Position numbers and translations under genes: made by a program. Source: Antechinus flavipes (taxonomy: Eukaryota). Taken from it: a DNA stretch of 64,000 nucleotides. Below the pieces are notes generated by a model that saw nothing but the letters and a program-made list of their open reading frames with translations, had not been told where the DNA came from and did not search any database. The DNA lies in the NCBI RefSeq assembly GCF_016432865.1, contig NC_067400.1, positions 582,552,001 through 582,616,000 of the forward strand, written 5' to 3'. How positions within the stretch are numbered: the first letter of the stretch is position 1; each line of letters starts with the position of its first letter. This document shows positions 24,178 to 43,749 of the stretch, piece by piece.

Positions 24178-24286
24178 CTTCTTCCTCTCGGCATCCTCCT
24201 CATCCTCCTTCTCTTTCTCTTTTTCTTTTTCCTAAACATCGTCATCATGGAGCTCTTCTCCCACACATTCCTGGCCCCAAACCTGG
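24178..24286 (+). other. Candidate upstream exon for the GLIPR1-like cassettes (hypothetical)
   Basis: Acceptor-like GTTTTGTCTTAATCCAG ending 24177, Kozak-context ATCATGG (ATG 24247) and strong donor CTGG|GTGAGT after 24286. No transcript evidence. Confidence 0.3.
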
Positions 24287-25204
24287 GTGAGTCTGCCTGT
24301 CAGCCATGAGAATCCCCAGGATACTGTGCCCTGTGTCCCTAAGGGAAGCAACACTGGCTGTAGAGTCAAAGGACCTGAAATCCAAACCCACCCTAGCCAT
24401 TCACTACCTGTGTGACTCTAGCCAATTGATTCAAGCTATCTCATGCTTCAGCTTCCTCATTTGGAAAATGAGTGTATCATTTTAGATGACTATAGAAGTC
24501 TCTTTGAGTATTGAAATGTATGATCCTGTGAGAAATTAAATGGAAGGGGGAGGTGAGAGGAAGGGGCCCCAGAAAGGATTTCCTCATAACCTGTCAGCAA
24601 ATTCTAGATTTTGAGAGAGTATGGTTGCTTTAGACTTCAGCCATTCCATCTTGTGCTGCTCCCAAGGACGCCTTTCTCCCACCTAGGTACCAGCAATTTC
24701 ACATTGACCTTCCTTTCTGGAAGAAAAGAGATATGTTAAACTAATCCATCTGAGCCTTGGGGGTTTTGGTCATGAAATGTAGATGGGAAGGGGAGCTTAG
24801 AACCTAGGATGTCAGAGGTGGGAGGGCCCTTAAGAACACAGGATGTTAGAGCTGAGAAGGGACACAGAATGTCAGTCTTTGACATTCAAGAATTTCACTG
24901 ACCTCTCATTAAAATGCTAACATTAATAATAAAATGACTAATCATCCAGAAAATGATTCTCAAACTTTTTAAAATTTCATAGTGTTAAAAGTAAAACAAA
25001 GTAACTATGTCCTGTTGCACCAAAGCAACTTCAGTCACCACTAACCAACTTCCACATACAACAGAGTAGTTTCCTCTTGCTAATGCTAGTGGGCTTTCTG
25101 TTGCCTCATAATTGTAGACAGGACACACCCTTCAAATATCCACAAAGATCTGCTGCCTCCTTCTCATTCTGGCAAAGTTTACTGGACATGGGGGTTGGAA
25201 GATC

Positions 25205-26011
25205 ATGGACTCCTGCCTTAAAATTATGATATTTTCACTTTTTTCCATCTGCAACTGGGCATATAAAATAGATACTCTGCCCACCATTGAAAATGAAGCT
25301 TTCATCAAAGAGTGTGTTGACAGTCATAACAAGTTTCGATCACAAGTGACTCCCAAAGCCAGTAACATGTTGCGTGTGAGCTGGGATGCAGATTTGGCCA
25401 AAGTTGCTAAAGAATGGGCGCAGAAGTGTAAGTTTGGACATAACCCTGATCTGAATAAACCCAAAAAGTTGCACCCTACCTTCTCTACAGTGGGAGAGAA
25501 TCTCTGGATTGGCTCAGTTGGATCATTTTCTGAAAATTTTGCCATCAAAACGTGGAATGATAAGGCAAAAGACTATGACTTCCAGAATAAGAAATGTACT
25601 GGGATATGTGGTCATTATACTCAGGTGGTCTGGGCAGAGTCTTACAAGATTGGCTGTGCAGTTCAATATTGCCCCCAAATTGCTCAGTCTTTCATTATCA
25701 ATGGAGTAATTTTTGTGTGTGACTATGGACCAGCAGGAAATTATAATATGCAGCCCTACACGGAAGGAGAACCCTGCAGTGCCTGTAAAGAAGATACCTG
25801 TGTGGATCAGCTGTGTACAAATCCAAAGCGGGATGGAGAGGCTGCAAGTCCCAAGCCAGATGGAGATGCTGCAACTCACAAGCCAGGAACTCAGGAGACA
25901 ACCAAGGGCCGCCACAAAGTTTCTCTTGTTTTAATCTTGGTGCCAATATTTGTTATACTGGCTATCATATTGATCATTGTGATAGTGATAAAGCGTTATT
26001 TCGCAAGGTAA
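25205..26011 (+). CDS. GLIPR1: GLIPR1-like CAP-domain type I membrane protein, copy 1 (class A ectodomain, class-B-like TM/tail), 268 aa, intronless
   Basis: Signal-like N-terminus, LPTIENEAFIKECVDSHNKFRS (resembles GLIPR1 LPDIENEDFIKDCVRIHNKFRS), GENLW, CGHYTQVVW, VCDYGPAGNY, Cys-rich hinge and C-terminal hydrophobic segment. AATAAA at 26022. The symbol means GLIPR1-like paralog. Confidence 0.92.
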   Translation: MDSCLKIMIFSLFSICNWAYKIDTLPTIENEAFIKECVDSHNKFRSQVTPKASNMLRVSWDADLAKVAKEWAQKCKFGHNPDLNKPKKLHPTFSTVGENLWIGSVGSFSENFAIKTWNDKAKDYDFQNKKCTGICGHYTQVVWAESYKIGCAVQYCPQIAQSFIINGVIFVCDYGPAGNYNMQPYTEGEPCSACKEDTCVDQLCTNPKRDGEAASPKPDGDAATHKPGTQETTKGRHKVSLVLILVPIFVILAIILIIVIVIKRYFAR

Positions 26012-27002
26012 ATCATTTCTCAATAAATTTAATCCAAAGGGATGTGGGGATAATATCTTTTAAATGTCCAAACAACAAAAGATTTGTAATTCTGAAAGGG
26101 AAATCCACTCATCAGATTGCCAAAGCTGACAAATAAGAATAATGACAACTGCTGTAGGGACTTCTGGAAAACAAATATATTGAAGCATTGATGGTACAGT
26201 GACTTGGTTTAGACATCTAAAGAGGAACCTTAGAATTCAGGATGTCAGAGCTGGGAAGGCCCTTAAAACATAGGCGGTCAGAACTGGGAGGGCCCTTAGA
26301 ACCCAAGATGTCAGAGCTGGGAGGGCCCTTAGAACCCAGGAGGTCAGAGCTGGGAGAACCCTTAGAGCACAGGATGTCAGAGCTGGGAGGGGCCCTTAAA
26401 ACATAGGTCAGAGCTGGGAGGGACCTTAGAACCTGGAATGTCAGAGCTGGGAAGGCCCTTAGGATACAGGATGTCAGAGCTGGGAGGGCCCTTAGAACCC
26501 GGGAGGTCAGAGCTCAGAGGGCCTTTAAGGACATAGGATTCAGAGCTGGGATAGAGCTTAGAATTTAGAGCTTAGAATAGAGAATGTCAGAGTGGGGAGG
26601 GGCCCTTAAGACATGCTGAAGGGATCCTTAGAACTCAGGATGTCATTCTTTGACACTGACCTCTAATTAAACTATTAACATTAATAATAAAATGACTAAT
26701 CATCCAGAAAATGTCTCTCAAACTTTTTAAATGTCGCAGTGTTAAAAGTAAAACAAGGTAACCATGTCCTGTAGCACCACATAAAAAAGTAACCAGTCAC
26801 CCTTTACCAGGTTCCACATACAATATAAAAAGTAACTTCAGTCACCACTACATCTTCCTCATACAGATAGTAGTTTCCTCTTGCTAATGCTAGTGGGCTT
26901 TCTGTTGCCTCATAATTGTAGACAAGACACACCTTTCAAACATCCACAAAGATCTGCTGCCTCATTCTGGCAAAGTTTGCTGGACACGGGGGTTGGAAGA
27001 TC

Positions 27003-27908
27003 ATGGACTCCTGCCTTAAAATTATGGTATTTTCACTTTTTTCCATCTGCAATGAGGCATATCAGATACTCTGCCCACCACTGAAAATGAAGCTTTCATC
27101 AAAAAGTGTGTTGACAGTCATAACAAGTTTCGGTCACAAGTGACTCCCAAAGCTAGTAACATGATGCGTGTGAGCTGGGATACAGATTTGGCCTTCAGGG
27201 CTAAAAAATGTGCAGAAGAGTGTGAGTTTGAACATAACCCCGAACTGGAGCACCACAAAATGGTGCACCCTGCTTTTTCTTTAGTGGGAGAGAATCTCTG
27301 GATTGGCTCAATTGGAGCATTTTCTGAAAATTCTGCCGTCGAGATGTGGAATGATCAGGCAAAAAACTATGACTTCCAGAATAAGAAATGTACTGGGTTT
27401 TGTAGTCATTACACTCAGGTGGTCTAGGCAAATACTTATAAGATTGGCTGTGCAGTTCAATATTGCCCCAGAGAAGAACACGCTATGTTTTCCCAATGCA
27501 ATAGTGTTTGTATGTAACTATGGACCAGGAGGCAACAATGATGTGCAGCCCTATATGGAGGGAGAACCCTGCAGTGAGTGTCAAGAAGAGTGTGTGGATC
27601 AGCTGTGTACAAATCCAAAGCGGGAGAGAGAGTCTCCAAGTCCCCATCAAGTGAAAGATGATGAAGATCCCAAGCCAGATGATGTTGCAAATCTCATTCC
27701 AGATGAGGTTGCAAGTCACAAGCCAGATGAAGATGCTTCAAGTCACAAGCCAGAAGGAGTTGCTGCAAATCATAAGCCAGATACTGAAGAGACAACCAAA
27801 GGCACCCAGAAATTTTTTCTTGTTTTAATCTTGGTGCCAATTTTTGCTGCACTGGCTATCATATTGATCATTGTGATAGTGATGATAAAGCGTTATTTCA
27901 CAAGGTAA
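27003..27908 (+). pseudogene. GLIPR1: GLIPR1-like copy 2 (class B), disrupted
   Basis: 4-bp deletion after GCATATCA (frameshift) and TGG>TAG at 27425-27427. Confidence 0.9.
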
Positions 27909-28428
27909 ATCATTTTTCAATAAATTTAATCAAAAGGTATTGGGGGATAATGTCATTTTTTAAATGTCTAAACAACAAAAGATTTGTAGTTCAGAAAGGG
28001 AAATCCACTCATCAGATTGCCAAAATTGACAAATAAGAATAATGACAAGTGCTATAGGAACTTCTGGAAAACAAATATAGTGAAGTGTTGATGGTACAGT
28101 GACTTGGTTCAGACATCTAAAGAGGAACCTTATAACATGAAATGTCAGAACTGGGAGAGGATTTGGAATCCAGGATGTCAGAGGTGGGAGGGCCCTTAGA
28201 ACACAAGATATCAGAGGTGGGAGGACCCTTAGAACACAGGATGTTAGAGCTGGGAAGTCCCTTGAAACACAGAATGTCAGTCACTGACATTCAAGAATTT
28301 CACTGACCTCTCATTAAAAAGCTAACATTAATAATAAAATGACTAATCATCCAGAAAATGATTCTCAAACTGTTTAAAATTTCATAGTGTTAAAAGTAAA
28401 ACAAGGTAACTATGTCCTGTTGTACCAT

Positions 28429-29194
28429 ATGAAAAAGCAACTTCAGTCATTATTTTCACTTTTTTCCATTTGCAACTGGGCATATAAAATGGATTCTCTG
28501 CCCACCAGTGAAAATGAAGCTTTCATCAAAGAGTGTGTTGACAGTCATAACAAATTTCGGTCACAAGTGACCCCCAAAGCCAGTAACATGATGCGTGTGA
28601 GCTGGGATGCAGATTTGGCCAAAGTTGCTAAAGAATGGATGCAGAAGTGTAATTTTGAACATAACCCTGATCTGAATATCCTCCAAAAGTTGCACCCTAC
28701 CTTCTCTGCAGTGGGAGAGAATCTCTGGATTGCCTCAATGGGAGCATTTTCTGAAAATTCTGCCATCAAAACGTGGAATGATGAGGTAAAAAAACTATGA
28801 CTTCCAGAGTAAATGTACTCGGGTGTGTGGTCATTATACTCAGGTGGTCTGGGCAGCTACTTACAAGATTGGCTGTGCAGTTTAATTTTACCCCAAAATT
28901 GCGCAGTCTTTCATTACCAATGGAGCAGTTTTTGTGTGTGACTATGGACCAGCAGGAAATTATTATCATATGCAGCCCTACAAGGAAGGACAACCCTGCA
29001 GTGCCTGTAAAGAAGATACCTGTGTGGATCAGCTGTGTACAAATCCAAAGCGGGATGGAGAGGCTGCAAGTCCCAAGCCACATACTGAATCAGCCACTTG
29101 CAGCTACAAATTTCTTCTTGTGATCTTGGTGCCAATTTTTGCTATACTGGCTATTATATTGGCCATTGTGACAAAGCGTTATTGTGCAAAGTAA
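28429..29194 (+). pseudogene. GLIPR1: GLIPR1-like copy 3 (class A), disrupted
   Basis: ~185-bp deletion removes the normal ATG, an A-run frameshift occurs at ~28790, and CAA>TAA lies at 28883-28885. Confidence 0.9.
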
Positions 29195-29954
29195 ATCATT
29201 TCTGAATAAATTAAATCAAAGGGGATGATGGGATAATATCTTTTTAAATGTCTAAACAACAAAAGATTTGTAATTCTGAAAGGGAAATGCACTCATCAGA
29301 TTGCCAAAGTTGACAAATTATAATGACAACTTCTGTAGGGACTTCTGGAAAACAAATATATTGAAGCATTGATGGTACAGTGACTTGGTTTAGACATCTA
29401 AAGAGGAACCTTAGAATTCAGGATGTCAGAGCTGGGAGGGCCCTTAGAACCTAGGAGGTCAGAGCTGAGAGGGCCTTTAAGGACATAAGATTCAGAGCTG
29501 GGATAGAGCTTAGAATTTAGAGCTTAAAATAGAGAATGTCAGAGTGGGGAGGGGCCCTTAAGACATGCTGAAGGGATCCTTAGAACTCAGGATGTCATTC
29601 TTTGACACTGACCTCTAATTAAACTATTAACATTAATAATAAAATGACTAATCATCCAGAAATTGTCTCTCAAACTTTTTAAATGTCGCAGTGTTAAAAG
29701 TAAAACAAGGTAACCATGTCCTGTAGCACCACATAAAAAAGTAACCAGTCACCATTTACCAGGTTCCACATACAATAAAAAAAGTAACTTCAGTCACCAC
29801 TACATCTTCCTCATACAGGTAGTAGTTTCCTCTTGCTAATGCTAGTGGGCTTTCTGTTGCCTCATAATTGTAGACAGGACACACCCTTGAAACATCCACA
29901 AAGATCTGCTGCCTCATTCTGGCAAAGTTTAGTGGACAGAGGGGTTGGATGATC

Positions 29955-30857
29955 ATGGACTTCTGCCTTAAAATTATGGTATTTTCACTTTTTTCCATCT
30001 GCAATGAGGCATATCAAATAGATACTCTGCCCACCATTGAAAATGAAGATTTCATCAAAAAGTGTGTTGACAGTCATAACAAGTTTCGGTCACAAGTGAC
30101 TCCCAAAGCCAGTAATATGATGCGTGTGAGCTGGGATACAGATTTGGCCTTCATGGCTAAAAACTGTGCAGAAGAGTGTGAGTTTGAACATAACGCCGAA
30201 CAGGATCACGAAGATATGGCGCACCCTGCTTTTTTTTTAGTGGGAGAGAATCTCTGGGTTGGCTCAATTGGAGCATTTTCTGAAAATTCTGCCGTCGAGA
30301 TGTGGAATGATCAGGCAAAAAACTATGACTTCCAGAATAAGAAATGTACTGGGGTATGTAGTCATTATACTCAGCTGGTCTGGGCAGATACTTATAAGAT
30401 TGGCTGTGCAGTTCAGTATTGCCCCAAAGCAGACCACTCTATGCTTCCCGATGCAATAGTGTTTGTATGTAACTATGGACCAGGAGGCAATAATGATGTG
30501 CAGCCCTACAAGGTGGGAGAACCCTGCAGTGAGTGTCAAGAAGATACCTGTGTGGATCAGCTGTGTACAAATCCAAAGCGGGAGAGAGAGCCTCCAACTC
30601 CCCATAAAGAGGAAGATGGACATCACAAGGAAGATGTTGCACATCTCATTCCAGATGAGGTTGCAAGTCACAAGCCAGATGAAGATGCTGCAAGTCACAA
30701 GCCAGGAGGAGTTGGTGCAAATCACAAGCCAGATACTGAAGAGACAACCAAAGGCACCCAGAAAGTTTCTCTTGTTTTAATCTTGGTGCCAATTTTTGCT
30801 GCACTGGCTATCATATTGATCATTGTGATAGTGATAAAGCGTTATTTCGCAAGGTAA
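29955..30857 (+). CDS. GLIPR1: GLIPR1-like copy 4 (class B), 300 aa (302 from ATG 29949), intact
   Basis: Complete ORF with CAP motifs (GENLW, SHYTQLVW, VCNYGPGGN), acidic His-rich stalk and TM segment. Confidence 0.92.
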   Translation: MDFCLKIMVFSLFSICNEAYQIDTLPTIENEDFIKKCVDSHNKFRSQVTPKASNMMRVSWDTDLAFMAKNCAEECEFEHNAEQDHEDMAHPAFFLVGENLWVGSIGAFSENSAVEMWNDQAKNYDFQNKKCTGVCSHYTQLVWADTYKIGCAVQYCPKADHSMLPDAIVFVCNYGPGGNNDVQPYKVGEPCSECQEDTCVDQLCTNPKREREPPTPHKEEDGHHKEDVAHLIPDEVASHKPDEDAASHKPGGVGANHKPDTEETTKGTQKVSLVLILVPIFAALAIILIIVIVIKRYFAR

Positions 30858-31585
30858 ATCATTTCTCAATAAATTTAATCAAAAGGGATTGGGGGATAAT
30901 GTCATTTTTAAATGTCTAAACAAAAGATTTGTAGTTCAGAAAGGGAAATCCACTCATCAGATTGCCAAAATTGATAAATAAGAATAATAGCAAGTGCTAT
31001 AGGAACTTCTGGAAAACAAATATAGTGAAGTGTTGATGATACAGTGACTTGGTTCAGACATCTAAAGAGGAACCTTATAACATGAAATATCAGAACTGGG
31101 AGAGGATTTGGAATCCAGGATGTCAGAGGTGGGAGGGCCCTTAGAACACAAGATATCAGAGGTGGGAGGACCCTTAGAATCCAGGATGTCAGAGCTGAGA
31201 GGGCCCTTAGAACCCAGGATGTTAGAGCTGGGAAGTCCCTTTGAAACATAGAATGTCAGTCGTTGACATTCAAGAATTTTACTGACCTCTCATTAAAATG
31301 CTAACATTAATAATAAAATGACTAATCATCCAAAAAATGGTTCTCAAACTTTTTAAAATATCAGTGTTAAAAGTAAAACAAGGTAATTATGTCCTGTTGC
31401 ACCATATGAAAAAGCTACTTCAGTCACCACTACAGCTTCCTCATACAACAGAGTAGTTTCCTCTTGCTAATGCTAGTGGGCTTTCTGTTGCCTCATAATT
31501 GTAGACAGGACACACCCTTCAAACATCCACAAAGATCTGCTGCCTCATTCTGGCAAAGTTTACTGGATACGGGGGTTGGAAGATC

Positions 31586-32359
31586 ATGGACTCCTGCCTT
31601 AAAATTATGATATTTTCACTTTTTTCCATCTGCAACTGGGCATATAAAATGGATTCTCTGCCCACCATTGAAAATGAAGCTTTCATCAAAGAATGTGTTG
31701 ACATTCATAACAAGTTTCGATCACAAGTGACTCCCAAAGCCAGTAACATGATGCGTGTGAGCTGGGATGCAGATTTGGCCAAAGTTGCTAAAGAATGGGC
31801 GCAGAAGTGTAAGTTTGGACATAACCCTGATCTGAATAAACCCAAAAAGTTGCACCCTACCTTCTCTGCAGTGGGAGAGAATCTCTGGATTGGCTCAATT
31901 GGAGCATTTTCTGAAAATTCTGCCATCAGAACGTGGAATAATGAGGTAAAAAACTATGACTTCCACAGTAAGAAATGTACTCGGGTGTGTGGTCATTATA
32001 CTCAGGTGGTCTGGGCAGCTACTTACAAGATTGGCTGTGCAGTTCAATTTTGCCCCAAAATTGAGCAGTCTTTCATTACCAATGGAGCAGTTTTTGTGTG
32101 TGATTATGGACCAGCAGGAAATTATTATCATATGCGGCCCTACAAGGAAGGAGAACCCTGCAGTGCCTGTAAAGAAGATACCTGTGTGGATCAGCTGTGT
32201 GCAAATCCAAAGCGGGATGGAGAGGCTGCAAGTCCCAAGCCACATACTGAGTCAGCCACACGCAGTCACAAATTTTTTCTTCTTCTGATCTTGGTGCCAA
32301 TTTTTGCTATACTGGCTATTATATTGGCCATTGTGACAAAGCGTTATTGCGCAAAGTAA
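31586..32359 (+). CDS. GLIPR1: GLIPR1-like copy 5 (class A), 257 aa, intact
   Basis: Complete ORF with CAP motifs, short stalk, TM segment and KRYCAK tail. Confidence 0.92.
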   Translation: MDSCLKIMIFSLFSICNWAYKMDSLPTIENEAFIKECVDIHNKFRSQVTPKASNMMRVSWDADLAKVAKEWAQKCKFGHNPDLNKPKKLHPTFSAVGENLWIGSIGAFSENSAIRTWNNEVKNYDFHSKKCTRVCGHYTQVVWAATYKIGCAVQFCPKIEQSFITNGAVFVCDYGPAGNYYHMRPYKEGEPCSACKEDTCVDQLCANPKRDGEAASPKPHTESATRSHKFFLLLILVPIFAILAIILAIVTKRYCAK

Positions 32360-33189
32360 ATCATTTCTGAATAAATTAAATCAAAGGGGATGATGGGATA
32401 ATATCTTTTTAAATGTCTAAACAACAAAAGATTTGTAATTCTGAAAGGGAAATCCACTCATCAGATTGCCAAAGTTGACAAATAAGAATAATGACAACTT
32501 CTGTAGGGACTTCTGGAAAACAAATATATTGAAGCATTGATGGTACAGTGACTTGGTTTAGACATCTAAAGAGGAACCTTAGAATTCAGGATGTCAGAGC
32601 TGGGAGGGCCCTTAAAGCATAGGCGGTCAGAACTGGGAGGGCCCTTAGAACCCAAGATGTCAGAGCTGGGAGGGCCCTTAGAACCCAGGATGTCAGAGCT
32701 GGGAGGGCCCTTAGGATACAGGATGTCAGAGCTGGGATAGAGCTTAGAATTTAGAGCTTAAAATAGAGAATGTCAGAGTGGGGAGGGGCCCTTAAGACAT
32801 GCTGAAGGGATCCTTAGAACTCAGGATGTCATTCTTTGACACTGACCTCTAATTAAACTATTAACATTAATAATAAAATGACTAATCATCCAGAAATTGT
32901 CTCTCAAACTTTTTAAATGTCGCAGTGTTAAAAGTAAAACAAGGTTAACTACGTCCTGTAGCACCACATAAAAAAGTAGCCAGTCACCCTTTACCAGGTT
33001 CCATATACAATATAAAAAGTAACTTCAGTCACCACTACAGCTTCCTCATACAGATAGTAGTTTCCTCTTGCTAATGCTAGTGGGCTTTCTGTTGCCTCAT
33101 AATTGTAGACAGGACACACCCTTCAAACATTGACAAAGATCTGCTGCCTCATTCTGGCAAAGTTTAGTGGACAGAGGGATTGGAAGAGC

Positions 33190-34095
33190 ATGGACTCCTG
33201 CCTTAAAATCATGGTATTTTCACTTTTTTCCATCTGCAATGAGGCATATCAAATAGATACTCTGCCCACCATTGAAAATGAAGATTTCATCAAAAAGTGT
33301 GTTGACAGTCATAACAAGTTTCGGTCACAAGTGACTCCCAAAGCCAGTAACATGATGCGTGTGAGCTGGGATGTAGATTTGGCCTTCAGGGCTAAAAACT
33401 GGGCAGAAGAGTGTGAGTTTGAACATAACCCCGAACAGGAACACCACAAAATGGTGCACCCTGCTTTTTCTTTAGTGGGAGAGAATCTCTGGATTGGCTC
33501 AATTGGAGCATTTTCTGAAACTTCTGCCATTGGGATGTGGAATGATCAGGCAAAAAACTATGACTTCCAGACTGAGCAATGTACTGGGGTATGTAGTCAT
33601 TATACTCAGCTGGTCTGGGCAGATACTTATAAGATTGGCTGTGCAGTTCAGTATTGCCCCAAAGCAGACCACTCTATGCTTCCCGATGCAATAGTGTTTG
33701 TATGTACCTATGGACCAGGAGGCAATAATGATGTGCAGCCCTACAAGGAGGGAGAACCCTGCAGTGAGTGTCAAGAAGATACCTGTGTGGATCAGCTGTG
33801 TACAAATCCAAAGCGGGAGAAAGAGCCTCCAACTCGCTATCAAGAGGAAGATGAACATCACAAGGAAGATGTTGCACATCTCATTCCAGATGAGGTTGCA
33901 AGTCACAAGCCAGGTGAAGATGCTGCAAGTCACAAGCCAGAAGGAGTTGCTGCAAATCACAAGCCAGATACTGAAGAGACAACCAAAGGCACCCAGAAAT
34001 TTTTTCTTGTTTTAATCTTGGTGCCAATTTTTGCTGTACTGGCTATCATATTGATCATTGTGATAGTGATGATAAAGCGTTATTTCACAAGTTAA
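33190..34095 (+). CDS. GLIPR1: GLIPR1-like copy 6 (class B), 301 aa, intact
   Basis: Complete ORF from ATG 33190 (the track starts at an upstream TTG) with CAP motifs, long stalk and TM. Confidence 0.92.
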   Translation: MDSCLKIMVFSLFSICNEAYQIDTLPTIENEDFIKKCVDSHNKFRSQVTPKASNMMRVSWDVDLAFRAKNWAEECEFEHNPEQEHHKMVHPAFSLVGENLWIGSIGAFSETSAIGMWNDQAKNYDFQTEQCTGVCSHYTQLVWADTYKIGCAVQYCPKADHSMLPDAIVFVCTYGPGGNNDVQPYKEGEPCSECQEDTCVDQLCTNPKREKEPPTRYQEEDEHHKEDVAHLIPDEVASHKPGEDAASHKPEGVAANHKPDTEETTKGTQKFFLVLILVPIFAVLAIILIIVIVMIKRYFTS

Positions 34096-34794
34096 ATCAT
34101 TTTTCAATAAATTTAATCAAAAGGGATTGGGGGATAATGTCATTTTTTAAATGTCTAAATAACAAAAGATTTGTAGTTCAGAAAGGGAAATCCACTCATC
34201 AGATTGCCAAAATTGACAAATAAGAATAATGACAAGTGCTATAGGAACTTCTGGTAAACAAATATAGTGAAGTGTTGATGGTACAGTGACTTGGTTCAGA
34301 CATCTAAAGAGGAACCTTATAACATGAAATGTCAGAGCGTGGAAAGGATTTAGAATCCAGGATATCAGAGTTGGGAGGGCCCTTAGAACCCATGAAGTCA
34401 GAACTTAGAGGACCCTTAGAACCCAAGATGTTAGAGCTGAGAAATCCCTTGAAACACAGAATGTCAGTCGTTGATATTCAAGAATTTCACTGACCTCTCA
34501 TTAAAATGCTAACATTAATAATAAAATGACTAATCATCCAGAAAATGATTCTCAAACTTTTTAAAATTTCATAGTGTTAAAAGTAAAACAAGGTAACTAT
34601 GTCCTGTTGTACCATATGAAAAAGCAACTTCAGTCACCACTATAGCTTCCTCATACAACATAGTAGTTTTTTCTTGCTAATGCTATTGGGCTTTCTGTTG
34701 CCTCATAATTGTAGACAGGATACACCCTTCAAACATCCACAAAATCTGCTGCCTCATTCTGGTAAAGTTTATTGGACATGGGGGTTGGAAGATC

Positions 34795-36903
34795 ATGGAC
34801 TCCTGCCTTAAAATTATGGTATTTTCATTTTTTTCCATCTGCAACTGGGCATATAAAATGGATTCTCTGCCCACCATTGAAAAGGAAGCTTTCATCAAAG
34901 AGTGTGGTGACATTCATAACAAGTTTCGGTCACAAGCGACTCCCAAAGCCAGTAACATGATGCGTGTGATGTACACCAAGATAAGGTCAAAATGGGTTCA
35001 TGACCTAGGCATAAAGAATGAGATTATAAATAAATTGGAAGAGCATAGGACAGTTTACCTGTGGAAGAGGGAGGAATTTAGGACCAAAGAAGAACTAGAA
35101 TTCACTATTGACCACAACATAGAAAATTTTGATTACATCAAATTGAAAAGTTTTTGTACAAACAAAACAAAGGCAGACAAGATTAGAAGGGAAACAATAA
35201 ACTGGGAAAACATTTTTACAATCAAAGGTTCTGATAAAGGCCTCATTTCCAAAATATATAGAGAATTGACTCTAATCTATAAGAAATCAAACCATTCTCC
35301 AATTGATAAATGGTCAAAGGATATCAACAGACAATTCTCAGACGAAGAAATTGAAACTATTTATAGACATATGAAAATATGCTCCAAATCATTATTAATC
35401 AGAGAAATGCAAATTAAGACAACTCAGATACCACTACACACCTGTCAGATTGGCTAGAATGACAGGGAAAGATAATGTGGAATGTTGGAGGGGATGTGGG
35501 AAAACAGGGACACTGATAGATTATTGGTGGAATTGTGAACACATCCAGCCATTCTGGAGAGCAATCTGAAACTATGCTCAAAAAGTTACCAAACTGTGCA
35601 TACCCTTTGATCCAGCAGTGTTTCTACTGGGCTTATACCCCAAAGAGATACTAAAGAAAGGAAAGGGACCTGTATGTGCCAAAATGTTTGTGGCAGCCCT
35701 GTTTGTAGTGGCTAGAAGCTGGAAAATAAAAGGATGTCCATCAATTGGAGAATGGTTGAGTAAATTGTGGTATATGAATGTTATGGAATATTGTTCTGTA
35801 AGGAATGACCAGCAAGATGAATACAGAGAGGCCTGGCGAGACTTACATGAACTGATGCTGAGTGAAATGAGCAGAACCAGGAGATCATTATATACCTCAA
35901 CAACGATACTGTTTGAGGATGTATTCTGATGGAAGTGGATCTCTTCAATAAAGAGAGCCTTAATTGATCAAAGATGGACAGAAGCAGCTACACCCAGAGA
36001 AAGAACACTGGGAAATGAATATAAACTGCTTGCATTTTTGTTTTTCCCGGGTTATTTCTACCTTCTGAATTCAATTCTCCCTGTGCAACAAGAAAACTGT
36101 TCGGTTCTGCACACATATATTGTATCTAGGATATACTGTAACCCATTCAACATGTAAAGGACTGCTTGCCATCTGGGGGAAGGGGTGGAGGGAGGGAGGG
36201 GAAAAAATCGGAACAGAAATGAATGCAAGGGATAATGCTGTTAAAAATTACCCTGGCATGCGTTCTATCAATAAAAAGTTATTTTAAAAAAATGATGCGT
36301 GTGAGCTGGGATGCAGATTTGGCCAAAGTTGCTAAAGAATGGGCGCAGAAGTGTAAGTTTGAACATAACCCTGATCTGAATGTCCCCCAAAAGTTGCACC
36401 CTACCTTCTCTGCAGTGGGAGAGAATCTCTGGATTGGCTCAATTGGAGCATTTTCTGAAAATTCTGCCATCAAAACATGGAATGATGAGGTAAAAAACTA
36501 TGACTTCCAGAGTAAGAAATGTACTCGGGTGTGTGGTCATTATCCTCAGGTGGTCTGGGCAGATTCTTACAAGATTGGCTGTGCAGTTTAATATTGCCCC
36601 AAAATTGCTCAGTCTTTCATTACCAATGGAGCAGTTTTTGTGTGTGACTATGGACCAGCAGGAAATTATCATCATATGCAGCCCTACAAGGAAGGACAAC
36701 CCTGCAGTGCCTGTAAAGAAGATACCTGTGTGGATCAGCTGTGTGCAAATCCAAAGCGGGATGGAGAGGCTGCAAGTCCCAAGCCACATACTGAATCAGC
36801 CACACGCAGCCACAAATTTTTTTTTCTTCTGATCTTGGTGCCAATTTTTGCTATACTGGCTATTATATTGGCCATTGTGACAAAGCGTTATTGCGCAAAG
36901 TAA
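34795..36903 (+). pseudogene. GLIPR1: GLIPR1-like copy 7 (class A), split by an L1 insertion and carrying a premature stop
   Basis: 5' part 34795-34969 and 3' part 36292-36903, with TAA at 36589-36591. Confidence 0.92.
34970..36291 (+). mobile_element. 5'-truncated L1 inserted in GLIPR1-like copy 7
   Basis: ORF2 C-terminus, 3' UTR and AATAAA. 13-bp TSD ATGATGCGTGTGA at 34957-34969 and 36292-36304. Confidence 0.95.
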
Positions 36904-37893
36904 ATCATTTCTGAATAAATTAAATCAAAGGGGATGATGGGATAATATCTTTTTAAATGTCTAAACAACAAAAGATTTGTAATTCTGAAAGGGAAATCCA
37001 CTCATCAGATTGCCAAAGTTGACAAATAAGAATAATGACAACTTCTGTAGGGACTTCTGGAAAACAAATATATTGAAGCATTGATGGTACAGTGACTTGG
37101 TTTAGACATCTAAAGAGGAACCTTAGAATTCAGGATGTCAGAGTGGGAAGGCCCTTAAAACATAGGCGGTCAGAACTGGGAGGGCCCTTAGAACCCAGGA
37201 TGTCAGAGCTGGGAGGGCCCTTAGGATACAGGATGTCAGAGCTAGGAGGGCCCTTAAAACATAGGTCAGACCTGGGAGGGACATTAGAACCTGGAATGTC
37301 AGAGCTGGGAAGACCCTTAGGATACAAGATGTCAGAGCTGGGAGGGCCCTTAGAGCCCAGGATGTCAGAGCTGGGAGGGCCCTTAGAACCTAGGAGGTCA
37401 GAGCTGAGAAGGCCTTTAAGGACATAAGATTCAGAGCTGGGATAGAGCTTAGAATTTAGAGCTTAGAATAGAGAATGTCAGAGTGGGGAGGGGCCCTTAA
37501 GACATGCTGAAGGGATCCTTAGAACTCAGGATGTCATTCTTTGACACTGACCTCTAATTAAACTATTAACATTAATAATAAAATGACTAATCATCCAGAA
37601 AATGTCTCTCAAACTTTTTAAATGTCGCAGTGTTAAAAGTAAAACAAGGTAACCATGTCCTGTAGCACCACATAAAAAAGTAACCAGTCACCCTTTACCA
37701 GGTTCCACATACAATATAAAAAGTAACTTCAGTCACCACTACAGCTTCCTCATACAGATAGTAGTTTCCTCTTGCTAATGCTAGTGGGCTTTCTGTTGCC
37801 TCATAATTGTAGACAGGACACACCTTTCAAACATCCACAAAGATCTGCTGCCTCATTCTGGCAAAGTTTACTGGACATGGGGATTGGAAGATC

Positions 37894-38796
37894 ATGGACT
37901 CCTGCCTTAAAATTATGGTATTTTCACTTTTTTCCATCTGCAATGAGGCATATCAAATAGATACTCTGCCCACCATTGAAAATGAAGATTTCATCAAAAA
38001 GTGTGTTGACAGTCATAACAAGTTTCGGTCACAAGTGACTCCCAAAGCCAGTAACATGATGCGTTTGAGCTGGGATACAGATTTGGCCTTCAGGGCTAAA
38101 AAATGTGCAGAAGAGTGTGAGTTTGAACATAACCCCGAACTGGAGCACCACAAAATGGTGCACCCTGCTTTTTCTTTAGTGGGAGAGAATCTCTGGATTG
38201 GCTCAATTGGAGCATTTTCTGAAAATTCTGCCGTCGAGATGTGGAATGATCAGGCAAAAAACTATGACTTCCAGAATAATAAATGTACTAGGGTATGTAG
38301 TCATTATACTCAGCTGGTCTGGGCAGATACTTATAAGATTGGCTGTGCAGTTCAGTATTGCCCCAAAGCAGACCACTCTATGCTTCCCGATGCAATAGTG
38401 TTTGTATGTACCTATGGACCAGGAGGCAATAATGATGTGCAGCCCTACAAGGAGGGAGAACCCTGCAGTGAGTGTCAAGAAGATACCTGTGTGGATCAGC
38501 TGTGTACAAATCCAAAGCGGGAGAAAGAGCCTCCAACTCGCTATCAAGAGGAAGATGGACATCACAAGGAAGATGTTGCACATCTCATTCCAGATGAGGT
38601 TGCAAGTCACAAGCCAGATGAAGATGCTGCAAGTCACAAGCCAGAAGGAATTGCTGCAAATCATAAGCCAGATACTGAAGAGACAACCAAAGGCACCCAG
38701 AAAGTTTCTCTTGTTTTAATCTTGGTGCCAATTTTTGCTGCACTGGCTATCATATTGATCATTGTGATAGTGATAAAGCGTTATTTCGCAAGGTAA
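37894..38796 (+). CDS. GLIPR1: GLIPR1-like copy 8 (class B), 300 aa, intact
   Basis: Complete ORF with CAP motifs, long stalk and TM. Confidence 0.92.
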   Translation: MDSCLKIMVFSLFSICNEAYQIDTLPTIENEDFIKKCVDSHNKFRSQVTPKASNMMRLSWDTDLAFRAKKCAEECEFEHNPELEHHKMVHPAFSLVGENLWIGSIGAFSENSAVEMWNDQAKNYDFQNNKCTRVCSHYTQLVWADTYKIGCAVQYCPKADHSMLPDAIVFVCTYGPGGNNDVQPYKEGEPCSECQEDTCVDQLCTNPKREKEPPTRYQEEDGHHKEDVAHLIPDEVASHKPDEDAASHKPEGIAANHKPDTEETTKGTQKVSLVLILVPIFAALAIILIIVIVIKRYFAR

Positions 38797-39591
38797 ATCA
38801 TTTCTCAATAAATTTAATCAAAAGGGATTGGGGGATAATGTCATTTTTTAAATGTCTAAACAACAAAAGATTTGTAGTTCAGAAAGGGAAATCCACTCAT
38901 CAGATTGCCAAAATTGACAAATAAGAATAATGACAAGTGCTATAGGAACTTCTGGAAAACAAATATAGTGAAGTGTTGATGGTACAGTGACTTGGTTCAG
39001 ACATCTAAAGAGGAACCTTATAACATGAAATGTCAGAACTGGGAGAGGATTTGGAATCCAGAATGTCAGAGGTGGGAGGGCCTTTAGAGCCCAGGATGTC
39101 AGAGCTGAGAGGGCCTTTAGAACAGAGGATGTCAGAGCTGAGAGGGCCCTTAGAACCCAGGAGGTCAGAGCTGGGAGGGCCCTTAGAATCCAGAATGTCA
39201 GAGCTGGGAGGGAGCTTAGAATACTGGATGTCAGAAGTAGGAAGGAACACAGAATGTCAGTCTTTGACATTCAAGAATTTCACTGACCTCTCATTAAAAT
39301 GCTAACATTAATAATAAAATGACTAATTATCCAGAAAATGATTCTCAAAGTTTTTTAAATTTCACAGTATTAAAAGTAAAACAAGGTAACTGTCCTGTTG
39401 TGTACCATATGAAAAAGCAACTTCAGTCACCGCTAACCAACTTCCACATACAACAGAGTAGTTTCCTCTTGCTAATGCTAGTGGACTTTCTGTTGCCTCA
39501 TAATTGTAGACAGGACACACCCTTCAAACATCCACAAAGATCTGCTGCCTCATTCTGGCAAGGTTTAATGGACACTGGAGTTTGGAAGATC

Positions 39592-40311
39592 ATGGATTTC
39601 TGCCTTAAAATAATGATATTTTCACTTTTTTCCATCTTCAACTGGGCATATAAAATGGATTCTCTGCCCACCATTGAAAATGAAGCTTTCATCAAAGAGT
39701 GTGTTGATCTTCATAACAAATTTCGGTCACAAGTGACCCCCAAAGCCAGTAACATGATGCATGTGAGCTGGGATGCAGATTTGGCCAAAGTTGCTAAAGA
39801 ATGGGCGCAGAAGTGTAAGTTTGAACATAACCCTGATCTGAATATCCCCCAAAAGTTGCACCCTACCTTCTCTGCAGTGGGAGAGAATCTCTGGATTGGC
39901 TCAATGGGAGCATTTTCTGAAAATTCTGCCATCAAAACATGGAATAATGAAGTAAAAAACTATAATTTCCAGAGTAAGAAATGTACTGGGGTATGTGGTC
40001 ATTATACTCAGGTGGTCTGGGCAGCTACTTACAAGATTGGCTGTGCAGTTCAATTTTGCCCCAAAATTGCACAGTCTTTCATTACCAATGGAGCAGTTTT
40101 TGTGTGTGACTGTGGACCAGCAGGAAATTATTATAATGTGCAGCCCTACAAGGAAGGAGAACCCTGCAGTGCCTGTAAAGAAGATACCTGTGTGGATCAG
40201 CTGTGTACAAATCCAAAGCGGGATGGAGAGGCTGCAAGTCCCAAGCCAAATGCTGAACAGCAAGCTAAAGACAAAAACTTTCTCTTCTTTTCATCTTGGT
40301 GCCAATTTTAG
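39592..40311 (+). CDS. GLIPR1: GLIPR1-like copy 9 (class A), 239 aa from the homologous ATG; frameshifted before the TM (soluble form, pseudogene or consensus error)
   Basis: CAP domain intact. The TM-coding sequence is out of frame (the tail IILIIVAKRHYAR ends at 40366 in another frame). The frame is also open upstream to ATG 39319. Confidence 0.55.
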   Translation: MDFCLKIMIFSLFSIFNWAYKMDSLPTIENEAFIKECVDLHNKFRSQVTPKASNMMHVSWDADLAKVAKEWAQKCKFEHNPDLNIPQKLHPTFSAVGENLWIGSMGAFSENSAIKTWNNEVKNYNFQSKKCTGVCGHYTQVVWAATYKIGCAVQFCPKIAQSFITNGAVFVCDCGPAGNYYNVQPYKEGEPCSACKEDTCVDQLCTNPKRDGEAASPKPNAEQQAKDKNFLFFSSWCQF

Positions 40312-43300
40312 TTTTATATTCACTATTATTCTGATCATTGTGGCAAAGCGTCATTATGCGAGGTAAATTATTTCTGAATAAATTTAATCAAAAGGAATTA
40401 TGGGATAATGTCATCTTTTAAAATGTCAAAACAAAAGATTTGTAATTCAGAAAAGGAAATCCAATTATCAGATTGCCAAAGCTGACAAATAGGGATAATG
40501 ACAACTGCTGTAGAGACATCTGGAAAACAAGTATATTGATGAAGTGTTGATGGTACAATGACTTGGTTCAGATTTCTGAAGAGGAACCTTAGAACTCAGG
40601 ATGTCAGGGCCGGGAGGGCCCTTAGAACCCAGGATGTCAGAAGTGGGAAGGCCCTTAGAACCCAGGATGTCAGAACTGGGAGGACCCTTAGAACACGGGA
40701 TGTCAGAGTTAGGAAGGTCCTTCAAACACAGAATGTCCAAGTCTTAGTCTTCCTTTAAGGTGAAAATGCTTTTCTTCAATAGCAATTTTATTCCAGTTGT
40801 GTTCCCAGAATCACAGAATTTTAGAACTCACAGGACTTTTTCATGGTCATATAGTGCAATCCCTACATGAAAGGAATCTGTATGACAACATACCTGAAAA
40901 GTGGACATTCAGCCTTGGCTGTCATGCAAGATGGCAATCTCTGAGAGGTAAGCCTCGGGAATCAGTTGGGGGACAGGAGAGAGTTTTGTAGTAGGTACAA
41001 GCAAGGATTACAGCCCATTACAAATGTGGAATCACCCTGGAGATTTTGTCTAAAGGATGTAGTCAGAAAAGTATATGGTATGGGGCGGGGAGGGAGAATT
41101 GGGAGGAGGTGCACAAGAGAGATAATAAATGGATAGTTGATGTGGTCTATTGGTATTCATGAAAGGTCAAGAGAATAAGGAGAAGGCCCTCATTTTGACT
41201 GGTAAACATTCAACAACCACCTCCCCAAAAAACTGGGAATGCTTATAAATTTCATCTGCATTAATATTTTCTCCGTCACTTTTTTTAAGTCTAGAAATTA
41301 GTGAAACAATAAATGAAGCTCTGACTTACAGTGTTTGCCAATTTTTTTTTGGGGGGGGGTGTCTAAATGCTCAAATTGAAAATTTAACAAGTGATTTTCA
41401 TGAACCTTTAAAACTGATTTTAGCAAACCCCAAGAAAAGTCTCCAAAATAATGGCTTTAAAAATATGATTTCAAAGTCATTATTTGCCTATTAAACTACT
41501 CCTCCCTTTTCTAACTACCTGAGTTACACCAGAATTTTCTCCATATATTTCAACATATTAAAACAGCTTAAGTACAGAAACAGATATGATACTCTAATTG
41601 TCATATATGAGGTCAAATATTAAAGACATTTGCAAAAATTAAAAAAGCAATGCCATTCTTTGCATTAATTTTTTGGGGAAAATTTTTTTTTAAAATATCT
41701 GTTACTATGCATTGAGATTATTGTCATTTTAATGAATTAATAAGTAATAACTTTAAATATATTAATCTAGTTAAAATTTAATGAATCAAATAGATATTTT
41801 TTAAATTCATATTTTTAATTTCATGTAGTAAATATTGATAGATATAACTCACACAAACAAAAAACTTTTGGAGGACTACAATCATTTTTAAAATAGAAAG
41901 GAGAACTGAGAAAAAGTTCATGATCTACTGTCCTAAATCACTGAAAAGTGGACATTCAGCCTTGGCTGTCATGCAAGATGGCAATTTCTTGGGTAACTCA
42001 GGAGCTTATCCCATTTATTATTATAAGAGCCAATTGTTAAATTTTCAGTATAAGGATTTACAACTCAGAAATCATCAAAATGCTACAAATCAAGGCCTGC
42101 TTTATTGTTTTATGGAGTGTCTAGATTTAACATAGTGATGGAAAAAATATAAGGCTGTTATTGTTATTAGTTCTCAGAGGACAGATGACATCACAAAGAT
42201 GATGTCTTGATTCTCTTCTGAATTGAGGCAGAGCAGTGCAAAGCTGTCAGCCTCACTCTTCCAGTGTTACCAAAGTGGTAAGACAAAAGTCACACTAAAG
42301 TTAAAACTGTGTTTTCCGAGACAGGAGGTAATGGTGCAGGATGGGCAGTCATGTAGAGGTTGTAATCTGCATTCCTGGAGGCAATCCACAATAATGAGAC
42401 CCCAGATCCATCAGAGCATTTGAGGATATGTTGGGAAAAAATAATCCCTGCCCTCAAGGAGTTTACTTTCTGTGGGGAAGATACAACAGTTAAACTGATA
42501 AATAGAAATAAGATAATTTTGGGAAGGGGAGCACTGCATTAGTCTTTTCCCCACAGAAAAGAAGGAATTGAGCAAACAAGACATGATCAGGCATTCAAAG
42601 TCAGTAAACATATGGTGATTAGATCCCAGGGATCCAACTAAATTCACAAGCTTTATCTCAAGATGCAGGGGAATGGCAAACTCCAATGGTACCCCCATCA
42701 CCTCCAAGATCAACAAAAGCCCTTCCTAATCTAGCCCTTTGCCACTTTTCCTTCTGTTATTTCCTTTTTATTCTGTATATAGAGTGGTTGTACATAGTAG
42801 TTTGCATGTTGTCTCCCACACACACATTGTGAGCTTTTTGAAGGCAAGAACTGTCTGCCTCTTTTTGTTTCCCCAGCACATAGTGGGTACTTAAATGTGT
42901 TTTTGTTTGGTTACTGGACAATAATGGAGTTCAAGGTGCTGGTCGTTATGGATTAAGTCTTTGGCAAAAAGGGTAGGGTTAAAAGGCTCAGTCAGTTGAG
43001 GAGACAGAAGGTCAAAAGTGGAACGTACTTACCTAAGCACTCCATAGGACTAAGTCAGGGTTGTAAGGTTTCTTAATTTGTTTTCTTTGTGTAAAAACAT
43101 AAGCCCATAAAGCACCTTTCTCTCAGTGATTAAGGGAAGGCATCTCTCTGCATCCCTACATCCGTATAAAGAGCAGCATCTTCCCAGAGCTGCCTAAGAG
43201 AAAATATTTCTAAATCTGTGAAACATACTTATAAAGCATCTCTTGTGTCCTACCAACCTAAGAACAGTCGCCCTTCTGTCCATGCATAAAAGAAAAGACC

Positions 43301-43479: not shown

Positions 43480-43745
43480 GACTCTGTACAGGCGAATGGT
43501 GCTTCCCACATGTTCATAGAAAGCATCTTTTAGCATCATATCATGACTGCCATTTGAACTTTTCTTGGCAAAGATACTGAAGTGGTTCCCCATTTCCTTC
43601 TCCCGCTTATTTTACAGATGAGGAAACTGAATGACATGACTCCATCAGGATCACACAACTAGTAAAAGTCTGAGAGAAGATTTGCATCCAGGAATTTAAA
43701 TCTTCCCCTCAGGCCTGGCACTCCATCCATAATACCATCCCTTGT
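43480..43745 (-). mobile_element. Marsupial CORE-SINE abutting the satellite
   Basis: TTTTCTTGGCAAAGATACTGAAGTGGTT...TTTTACAGATGAGGAAACTGA. Confidence 0.65.
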
Positions 43746-43749
43746 CGGT

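What the first reader, a model, noticed from the sequence alone, without database searches (positions are those of the whole stretch)
24178..39592. Possible shared first exon spliced to alternative whole-gene terminal cassettes
Seen: each cassette (except deleted copy 3) has a branch-like GCTAAT, a pyrimidine tract CTTTCTGTTGCCTC and TGTAGACAG|G upstream of its ATG. In all five intact copies the segment from the CAG (25121, 29877, 31508, 33112, 37816) to the ATG is 77 nt, or 83 nt in copy 1 through a frame-preserving +6. It is stop-free in the main frame and bounded upstream by an in-frame TAG, so it could only be read after splicing or from a non-AUG start. In the defective copies this feature is broken: CAG>CAA in copy 2, -1 nt in copy 7, +1 nt in copy 9, deleted in copy 3. 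A unique candidate exon at 24178-24286 (Kozak ATG 24247, donor GG|GTGAGT) supplies 40 nt, exactly the phase needed, giving MELFSHTFLAPNLGHTLQ...KICCLILAKF...WKIMDSC. Each cassette has AATAAA about 10 nt after its stop. Established: retrogenes often recruit distant promoters through new 5' introns. Inference: one promoter could feed several mutually exclusive terminal exons, a mirror image of the protocadherin/UGT1 layout. The event counts are small and the phase match could be chance.
Basis: partly seen in the sequence, partly recalled or inferred. Interest (0 to 1): 0.75.

Follow-up and report, generated by a model that had tools for sequence, protein, structure and literature searches.

The report
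Tandem GLIPR1 retrogene array, one captured exon
This is a marsupial-specific tandem array of nine intronless copies of the secreted/membrane CAP-family gene GLIPR1; the splice-like signal in front of each copy is a conserved piece of the parent gene's 5' untranslated region, and the upstream exon is joined, at most, to the first copy only.

Summary
The window comes from Antechinus flavipes chromosome CM028219.1.

The exon-to-copy-1 splice is already annotated. It matches RefSeq model XP_051846789.1 (309 aa).

The shared-exon idea is not supported:
- **Inherited motif.** Each unit is a full-length processed copy of multi-exon GLIPR1. It starts about 25-31 nt downstream of the parental TATA box. 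The pyrimidine tract and CAG|G lie in the parental 5'UTR of koala, brushtail possum, bilby and opossum.
- **Variable leader length.** Intact copies have 78 nt in Sarcophilus and 76, 77 or 78 nt in Sminthopsis.
- **Exon 1 not conserved.** Sarcophilus has GTG for ATG and a weaker donor. Sminthopsis has a 10-nt deletion and GT changed to AT.
- **Leader not coding-like.** All three frames are stop-free in four copies, and substitutions in the proposed frame are almost all nonsynonymous.
- **No other annotated link.** No other annotated protein carries this N-terminus. Cassettes 4, 5 and 9 are annotated from ATGs inside their own units.

Verdict: this is an ordinary though undescribed retrogene array, with perhaps one young 5' exon on cassette 1. 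I could not examine RNA-seq junction reads; they remain the decisive test.

The parts
24247..24286 (+). First coding exon of RefSeq model XP_051846789.1 (ATG, then 40 nt, then donor GG|GTGAGT). It is specific to Antechinus.
   Evidence: The orthologous sequence has GTG and GTGAAT in Sarcophilus, and a 10-nt deletion with GT changed to AT in Sminthopsis.
24287..25121 (+). The 835-nt intron of that model. It contains unique head-flank sequence, a short 33-bp minisatellite (about 24780-24875) and the first about 247 nt of the retrocopied 5'UTR.
24875..26107 (+). Cassette 1 (class A). It is a processed GLIPR1 copy made of parental 5'UTR (24875-25204), a CDS at 25205-26011 (268 aa from its own ATG) and a 3' part. 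AATAAA lies at 26022-26027.
25094..25131 (+). A 38-nt block conserved across marsupials (pyrimidine tract, TGTAGACAG|G, CACACCC). It is repeated in cassettes 2 and 4-9.
26106..26205 (+). L1 ORF2 fragment that is part of every repeat unit. It is followed by the 33-bp minisatellite spacer (26228-26551).
26688..28007 (+). Cassette 2 (class B), a pseudogene. It has CAA at 26923-26925, an ATG at 27003 and a frameshifted CDS.
28285..29291 (+). Cassette 3 (class A), a pseudogene. A deletion removed the block, the leader and the ATG.
29640..30952 (+). Cassette 4 (class B), intact. It is annotated as 302 aa from its own ATG at 29949, with CAG at 29877 and a 77-nt leader.
31259..32456 (+). Cassette 5 (class A), intact. 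It is annotated as a single-exon CDS of 257 aa at 31586-32359, with CAG at 31508.
32874..34194 (+). Cassette 6 (class B). Its ORF at 33190-34095 (301 aa) is intact, with CAG at 33112. No gene model of its own is on record.
34467..37000 (+). Cassette 7 (class A), a pseudogene. It has a 76-nt leader and an L1 insertion at about 34970-36288 flanked by a duplication of about 16 bp.
37579..38895 (+). Cassette 8 (class B). Its ORF at 37894-38796 (300 aa) is intact, with CAG at 37816. It serves as the 3' part of the chimeric model XP_051844258.1.
39260..40466 (+). Cassette 9 (class A). It has a 78-nt leader and a frameshift near the C-terminus that removes the transmembrane segment. It is annotated as 300 aa from ATG 39409, and that model reads straight through the 'acceptor'.
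40587..40737 (+). Terminal 33-bp minisatellite that closes the array.

Best explanation
The region is a dasyurid-specific tandem array of nine copies of a processed GLIPR1 retrogene (CAP/SCP family). Five copies have intact ORFs from their own ATG: cassettes 1, 4, 5, 6 and 8.

Origin of the unit. The founder was a full-length cDNA copy. It starts at the TATA-directed transcription start of the multi-exon parent, so it carries about 330 nt of parental 5'UTR but not the parental TATA promoter. The unit then picked up an L1 fragment and a 33-bp minisatellite. It was amplified by unequal crossing-over as alternating class A and class B units.

The 'acceptor'. The supposed branch point, pyrimidine tract and CAG|G belong to a 38-nt element of the parental 5'UTR. 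This element is conserved across marsupials and remains conserved in the retrocopies. It was not built for this array.

How the cassettes most likely work (inferred). Each intact cassette is a self-contained coding unit. It has its own ATG followed directly by the signal peptide, and its own AATAAA, which the array gained after retroposition. Where each cassette's transcription starts is unknown.

The upstream exon. In Antechinus alone, a flank segment at 24247-24286 has an ATG and a good donor. RefSeq splices it to the inherited CAG|G of cassette 1. I put the odds that this splice is real at about 60-65%. If it is real, it is a young exon capture specific to cassette 1, and the in-frame 41-residue extension is a by-product. 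It is not a shared first exon serving all cassettes.
For: - **Family.** The CAP domain is present. The best hits are GLIPR1 and GLIPR1-like proteins.
- **Processed copy.** Koala GLIPR1 spans 16.7 kb next to KRR1. Its exons align contiguously to each unit.
- **Start at the parental TSS.** Homology begins at koala L004 9657-9662, which is 25-31 nt after TATATAAA at 9632-9639. The same TATA is present in Trichosurus.
- **Inherited block.** It is present in the 5' regions of koala, Trichosurus, bilby and Monodelphis. Among 13 retrocopies it is 97.8% identical, against about 89% for every other segment.
- **Own starts.** Cassettes 4, 5 and 9 are annotated from ATGs inside their own units. The first Sminthopsis cassette is likewise annotated from its own ATG.
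- **Own poly(A) signal.** AATAAA is present in all 18 dasyurid copies examined. The three parents that matched carry AGTAAC or AATAAC at that position.
- **Exon 1 to cassette 1.** This is RefSeq XP_051846789.1.
- **Exon 1 not conserved**. The surrounding head flank is orthologous in the other two dasyurids at 90% and 85% identity.
- **Leader length varies** among intact copies: 76, 77, 78 and 83 nt.
- **No coding constraint.** Leader pN/pS is 3.7 in the proposed frame and 0.7 in the other two frames.
- **No other carrier.** No other protein in the collection has this N-terminus.
- **Functional genes.** Class A orthologues have dN/dS of 0.34-0.50.
Against: - Because the retrocopy lacks the parental TATA promoter, every cassette needs some other promoter, and I could not identify one. 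This leaves room for a shared upstream promoter.
- All intact cassettes keep an identical acceptor-like block, so if cassette 1's block works as an acceptor, the others are competent too.
- The block's extra conservation in the retrocopies is compatible with use as an acceptor.
- The annotation evidence is indirect. The records show CDS ranges only, so non-coding 5' exons would be invisible.
- At least one model in the array is a computational chimera, so XP_051846789.1 could also be an artefact.
- No poly(A) remnant or target-site duplication of the founder was found.
Confidence: 0.7

Rival explanations
1. One promoter and one first exon (24178-24286) are spliced, mutually exclusively, to the acceptor of several whole-gene terminal cassettes. 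This gives each product a common N-terminal extension.
For: - The exon-to-cassette-1 junction is annotated.
- Intact cassettes 4, 5, 6 and 8 have identical acceptor-like blocks and 77-nt leaders that would stay in frame.
- The cassettes lack the parental TATA promoter.
- Each cassette has its own AATAAA.
Against: - The block is parental 5'UTR, not a derived acceptor. One parent has CAA at that position.
- The stretch from -14 to -5 before the AG has only 4 of 10 pyrimidines, and there is a competing AG at -6/-5 (read).
- Exon 1 lacks its ATG or donor in the two other dasyurid arrays.
- Leader length is 76, 77 or 78 nt in their intact copies.
- The leader shows no coding constraint.
- The extension would bury the signal peptide.
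- Between one and seven AATAAA sites must be skipped to reach the distal cassettes.
- No annotated isoform joins the exon to another cassette.
- A phase match is expected by chance.
Confidence: 0.07
2. No splicing occurs at all. XP_051846789.1 is a gene-prediction artefact, and cassette 1 is transcribed as a single exon like the others.
For: - A neighbouring RefSeq model, XP_051844258.1, joins pseudogene copy 2 to copy 8 across about 10.9 kb. It uses a weak GT and an AG with no pyrimidine tract, at paralogous positions.
- The models for cassette 9 and an older Sarcophilus model simply take the longest ORF through the 'acceptor'.
- The acceptor is mediocre.
- Exon 1 is not conserved.
Against: A predictor with a complete homology-supported ORF from ATG 25205 has little reason to add a novel upstream coding exon without intron evidence. 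The model starts at 24247 rather than at the in-frame ATG at 24109, which suggests a transcript-defined 5' end. 106 RNA-seq samples of this species have been published, and the RefSeq pipeline may have drawn on them.
Confidence: 0.2
3. Each cassette has its own short 5'UTR intron. A donor-like CAAG|GTAAC sits about 120-170 nt upstream in the same unit and would be spliced to the inherited CAG|G. Transcription would start at the head of each unit.
For: The donor-like site is present in eight of the nine units. It is weaker in copy 1 (AAA|GTAACT) and was not found in copy 6. It is absent from the parental genes, which have an A-rich run there. Its rough consensus score is similar to that of the exon-1 donor (about 78 by hand, using the same matrix that gave 79.2).
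Against: There is no transcript evidence. The models for cassette 9 and for Sarcophilus read through this region as exon. G is replaced by C at donor position +5.
Confidence: 0.08

Closest known systems
Retrogenes that recruit a new 5' exon or promoter through a new 5'UTR intron (described for primate and rodent retrogenes; cited from my own knowledge, not checked here)
   Same: A processed copy lacks the parental core promoter. An upstream flank segment with a donor is spliced into the retrocopy's 5'UTR. This is annotated for cassette 1.
   Different: The acceptor is a pre-existing conserved parental 5'UTR element. The new exon adds an in-frame ATG. The exon is not conserved even within the family Dasyuridae.
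Protocadherin and UGT1A clusters (variable first exons, shared constant exons)
   Same: Tandem near-identical cassettes, and the idea of choosing one cassette per transcript.
   Different: Those clusters have a promoter in front of each variable exon and shared 3' exons. Here the proposed sharing is at the 5' end. Each cassette is a whole gene with its own ATG and poly(A) signal. No isoform evidence exists for sharing.
Drosophila lola and mod(mdg4) (common 5' exons joined to alternative 3' terminal exons; cited from my own knowledge)
   Different: In those genes the common part encodes a conserved domain and the cassettes cannot stand alone. Here the common part would be 14 unconserved residues, and the cassettes are complete genes.
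Canonical GLIPR1 (multi-exon, next to KRR1) and its GLIPR1L paralogues
   Same: CAP domain, N-terminal signal peptide and C-terminal transmembrane segment. Identity to koala GLIPR1 is 71%.
   Different: The copies here are intronless and tandemly amplified into two diverging classes. Class B has an acidic and histidine-rich repeat insertion before the transmembrane segment. No synteny with KRR1 was detected in the window.

Membership tests
CAP/SCP superfamily, GLIPR1 subfamily | CAP domain (PF00188) | tested here: met
   E-values of 1.9e-22 to 2.4e-20 for cassettes 1, 4 and 5.
CAP/SCP superfamily, GLIPR1 subfamily | Closest relatives are GLIPR1 proteins with the same N-terminal signal sequence and C-terminal hydrophobic anchor | tested here: met
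   54-71% identity to marsupial GLIPR1, colinear from the start methionine to the C-terminal hydrophobic stretch. The signal peptide and transmembrane segment were judged by eye, not with a predictor.
Processed retrogene | All parental introns are absent and the exons are contiguous | tested here: met
   koala exons spread over 16.7 kb align end to end within each unit of about 1.2 kb.
Processed retrogene | The copy begins at the parental transcription start and excludes the promoter | tested here: met
   homology starts 25-31 nt downstream of the TATA box shared by koala and Trichosurus. No homology lies upstream of that point.
Processed retrogene | Poly(A) remnant and target-site duplication | tested here: not met
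   homology ends at about 26107 with no A-run. An L1 fragment and the minisatellite follow. The founder's ends have probably been erased by later rearrangement.
Shared-exon locus with alternative terminal cassettes | Products or isoforms that join the common exon to two or more cassettes | tested here: not met
   only one protein (cassette 1) carries this N-terminus among the annotated proteins. RNA-level evidence cannot be tested with these tools.
Shared-exon locus with alternative terminal cassettes | The common exon and its donor are conserved in related arrays | tested here: not met
   ATG changed to GTG and GTGAGT to GTGAAT in Sarcophilus. Sminthopsis has a 10-nt deletion and GT changed to AT.
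Shared-exon locus with alternative terminal cassettes | Reading phase across the junction is conserved in intact cassettes | tested here: not met
   leaders are 78 nt in Sarcophilus and 76, 77 or 78 nt in Sminthopsis; there is no purifying selection in the proposed frame.
Retrogene with a recruited 5' exon | An upstream exon spliced into the retrocopy's 5'UTR | tested here: inconclusive
   present in RefSeq XP_051846789.1 for cassette 1. The transcript support behind that model is not visible with these tools.

The most novel reading that the evidence does not exclude
The deeply conserved 38-nt element of the GLIPR1 5'UTR acts as a ready-made splice acceptor that every retrocopy inherited. Transcripts starting at the Antechinus-specific exon at 24247-24286 would then skip proximal cassettes and their poly(A) sites at a meaningful rate. 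One promoter would express several alternative whole-gene terminal cassettes of classes A and B, each with a common N-terminal extension.
Probability: 0.07. Interest if true: 0.7.

Novelty: new member of a known kind. Interest (0 to 1): 0.3.

Why it matters
If the best explanation is right, the locus is a clean textbook case and not a new mechanism. It shows a full-length retrocopy that starts exactly at the parental TATA-directed start site. The copy was amplified into an alternating two-class array, part of which evolves fast (dN/dS about 1 or more) while one class A lineage is constrained.

The locus also shows how a conserved 5'UTR element can look like a purpose-built splice acceptor, and may occasionally serve as one. 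In addition, it flags two RefSeq models in the array that need transcript-level checking. The shared-exon layout would be unusual for mammals, but the comparative evidence speaks against it.

Tried and rejected
- **Array at the parental locus (intron loss in situ).** No KRR1 exons and no colinear flank homology to the koala, possum, bilby or opossum loci were found. Only dispersed repeats matched. This is not proven either way.
- **Head flank 24000-24770 as a repeat or LTR that could supply a promoter.** It has no second copy in the window or in the fetched loci.
- **The block as an ancient vertebrate promoter or TSS element.** It is not clearly recognisable upstream of marmot GLIPR1 (L009) or in rodent cDNA contigs with a 5'UTR of about 179 nt (L010-L013). 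These sequences say nothing about its role in marsupials.
- **The block as a conserved acceptor in the parental gene.** This is unlikely. The retrocopy carries uninterrupted parental sequence on both sides of it, and the Trichosurus parent has CAA.
- **Literature.** No paper on GLIPR1 retrogenes or arrays in marsupials was found. There is only a bandicoot EST mention.
- **Transcript contigs.** No Logan transcript contig encodes the full array proteins (the contig counts show the genome only).
- **Splice scoring.** MaxEntScan and SpliceAI are not available.
- **Joined models left out.** Phase was computed arithmetically. The only joined sequence used was the stored database protein P0004, by reference.


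Full report
**Source and gene family.** The exact protein of cassette 5 is on record on chromosome CM028219.1 of assembly GCA_016432865.2, and the proteins of that record are named for Antechinus flavipes. Window coordinate equals L001 coordinate plus 21585. The ORFs in 25205-40311 carry a CAP/SCP domain. Their best relatives are GLIPR1 and 'GLIPR1-like' proteins of marsupials. None of the sequence handled here is human.

**Check of the observation.** The acceptor-like motif occurs eight times on the + strand, against none expected.
- The CAG positions, the in-frame TAG inside TGTAGACAG and the 83/77-nt leaders of the five intact copies are as stated. So are CAA in copy 2, 76 nt in copy 7, 78 nt in copy 9 and the deletion in copy 3.
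- ATG 24247 has a good Kozak context. It is followed by 40 nt and GG|GTGAGT.
- AATAAA begins 11 nt after the stop in all nine copies.

The facts are therefore right, but their weight is smaller than it looks:
- In copies 1, 2, 5 and 8 all three frames of the leader lack stops, so an open main frame says nothing.
- Within 6 kb upstream there are four ATG-to-donor mini-exons with the required phase and a donor at least as good by a rough consensus score.

**What the units are.** Koala GLIPR1 (L004) is a multi-exon gene of 16.7 kb lying next to KRR1. Its exons align end to end with each unit of the window, so the units are processed copies.
- *5' limit.* Class A units align from koala position 9657-9662. 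That is 25-31 nt downstream of a TATATAAA box at 9632-9639, and Trichosurus has the same box at the same place. The founder was therefore a full-length cDNA that began at the parental TATA-directed start. It carries about 330 nt of 5'UTR but not that promoter.
- *3' limit.* Homology ends about 96 nt after the stop, at about 26107. Next comes a 100-nt L1 ORF2 fragment, and then a 33-bp minisatellite that separates all units and flanks the array on both sides.
- *Related arrays.* Sarcophilus (L002) and Sminthopsis (L003) have orthologous arrays of about five intronless copies behind an orthologous head flank.

**The 'acceptor' is inherited.** The pyrimidine tract, the TG(T/A)AGACAG|G and the following CACACCC form a 38-nt block. 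It is nearly invariant in the 5' regions of the parental genes of koala, Trichosurus, bilby and Monodelphis, while the surrounding sequence is poorly conserved.
- In the source mRNA the block lay inside an unspliced first exon, because the retrocopy carries the parental sequence on both sides of it.
- One parent (Trichosurus) has CAA instead of CAG.
- Among 13 retrocopies of three species the block is 97.8% identical. The other segments are about 89% identical: upstream 5'UTR, rest of the leader, CDS, 3' part and L1 fragment. It is thus a functional element of some kind, but its function was not resolved here.
- As an acceptor it is mediocre. Only 4 of 10 bases are pyrimidines at -14 to -5, and there is a competing AG at -6/-5 (read).

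**The leader is not a conserved coding segment.**
- Intact copies have leaders of 78 nt in Sarcophilus (three copies) and 78, 76, 77 and 78 nt in Sminthopsis. The parents have 77 or 78 nt, with in-frame stops.
- Among the five intact Antechinus copies, substitutions in the proposed frame are almost all nonsynonymous (pN/pS 3.7). The other two frames give 0.7. The counts are small and the pairs are not independent.
- The rest of the leader is no better conserved than neutral-looking segments.
- An N-terminal extension would also put 39-41 residues in front of the signal peptide that begins at each cassette's own ATG.

**Exon 1.** The flank around it is unique sequence, 90% identical to Sarcophilus and 85% to Sminthopsis.
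- In Sarcophilus the ATG is GTG and the donor is GTGAAT.
- In Sminthopsis 10 nt of the 40 are deleted and the donor GT is AT.

The exon is therefore, at best, a novelty of the Antechinus lineage.

**Annotation evidence.**
- This is the only protein in the collection with that N-terminus, and its 90% cluster has one member.
- Cassette 5 is annotated as a single-exon CDS of 257 aa and cassette 4 as 302 aa from ATG 29949.
- Cassette 9 is annotated as 300 aa from ATG 39409, and that model reads through the 'acceptor'.
- The look-up keeps only the longest product per gene, so no longer exon-1 isoform is annotated for those cassettes.
- The first Sminthopsis cassette is also annotated from its own ATG.

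Two cautions apply. The look-up shows CDS ranges only, so non-coding 5' exons cannot be seen. Also, XP_051844258.1 (P0012) is a chimera that joins pseudogene copy 2 at 27397 to copy 8 at 38293. It uses a weak GT and an AG without a pyrimidine tract. Models in this array are therefore not all transcript-driven.

**Are the cassettes genes?** Class A orthologues show dN/dS of 0.34-0.50. Class B orthologues, and the paralogues within Antechinus, show about 0.9-3 on few synonymous changes. At least the class A lineage is under constraint, and the rest evolves fast. The AATAAA after the stop is present in all 18 dasyurid copies examined. It reads AGTAAC or AATAAC in the koala, Trichosurus and bilby parents that matched the pattern, so the retrogene lineage gained it.

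**Conclusion and odds.**
- *Best reading (0.7).* This is a tandemly amplified full-length GLIPR1 retrogene. Its splice-like block is parental 5'UTR. The cassettes are self-contained coding units. If the exon-1 splice is real (about 60-65%), it is a young capture specific to cassette 1.
- *Shared-exon model (about 0.07).* It cannot be excluded, because the cassettes lack the parental promoter and all keep the same block.
- *No splicing at all (about 0.2).* XP_051846789.1 would be an artefact.
- *Cassette-internal 5'UTR intron (about 0.08).* It would use CAAG|GTAAC donors that arose in the retrocopies.

Published RNA-seq of this species would decide among these readings.

Only the stored RefSeq protein was used, by reference.

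Noticed in passing
window 27161-38796 (junction 27397 / 38293): RefSeq XP_051844258.1 (246 aa) joins the front of pseudogene cassette 2 to the back of cassette 8 across about 10.9 kb. The join is at paralogous positions and uses a weak GT and an AG with no pyrimidine tract. It is probably an annotation artefact. Cassette 6, which lies inside this 'intron', has no model of its own.
   Followed up: partly
window 25205-38796; L002; L003: dN/dS is 0.34-0.50 between class A orthologues (Antechinus copy 5, Sarcophilus copy 2, Sminthopsis copy 1). It is about 0.9-3 for class B orthologues and for paralogues within Antechinus. This suggests fast or positively selected divergence in part of the array.
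   Followed up: partly
window 26009-26015 and the equivalent sites; L004 26711-26720; L007; L005: The stop codon of the koala, Trichosurus and bilby parents, and of the retrocopies, overlaps a donor-like AAG|GTAAA. The bilby and Monodelphis GLIPR1 proteins continue past this point. The founder cDNA therefore seems to derive from an isoform that did not splice the last intron.
   Followed up: no
one search hit list: No canonical multi-exon GLIPR1 of any dasyurid (Antechinus, Sarcophilus, Sminthopsis) appears among the best 120 hits, while koala, possum, glider, bilby and opossum GLIPR1 do. The retro-array may have replaced the parent in dasyurids. Absence was not rigorously tested.
   Followed up: no
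window 24780-24875, 26228-26551, 31090-31245, 37121-37442, 40587-40737 and others: A 33-bp minisatellite flanks every unit and both ends of the array. It is the likely substrate for the unequal crossing-over that amplified the array.
   Followed up: partly
window 34970-36288: An L1 insertion lies in the CDS of cassette 7. It is flanked by a duplicated target of about 16 bp.
   Followed up: partly
window 39319-40311; Sarcophilus protein P0127: In units with a 78-nt leader, the whole 5'UTR-derived region is open in frame with the CDS from an upstream ATG, for about 90 extra codons. Older and current gene models use this frame. The extension is most likely spurious.
   Followed up: no
window 43700-49000: A GC-rich region of about 5 kb (0.59 GC, GC skew -0.59) consists of low-complexity repeats of CTCGC/ACTCGC type. 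It produces spurious ORFs of 1600-1750 codons.
   Followed up: no
window 24996, 26753, 28401, 29705, 31378, 34588, 37644, 39381: A donor-like CAAG|GTAAY (AAA|GTAACT in copy 1) lies about 120-170 nt upstream of the acceptor-like CAG in eight of the nine units. The pattern search found none in copy 6. The parental genes have an A-rich run at this position.
   Followed up: partly
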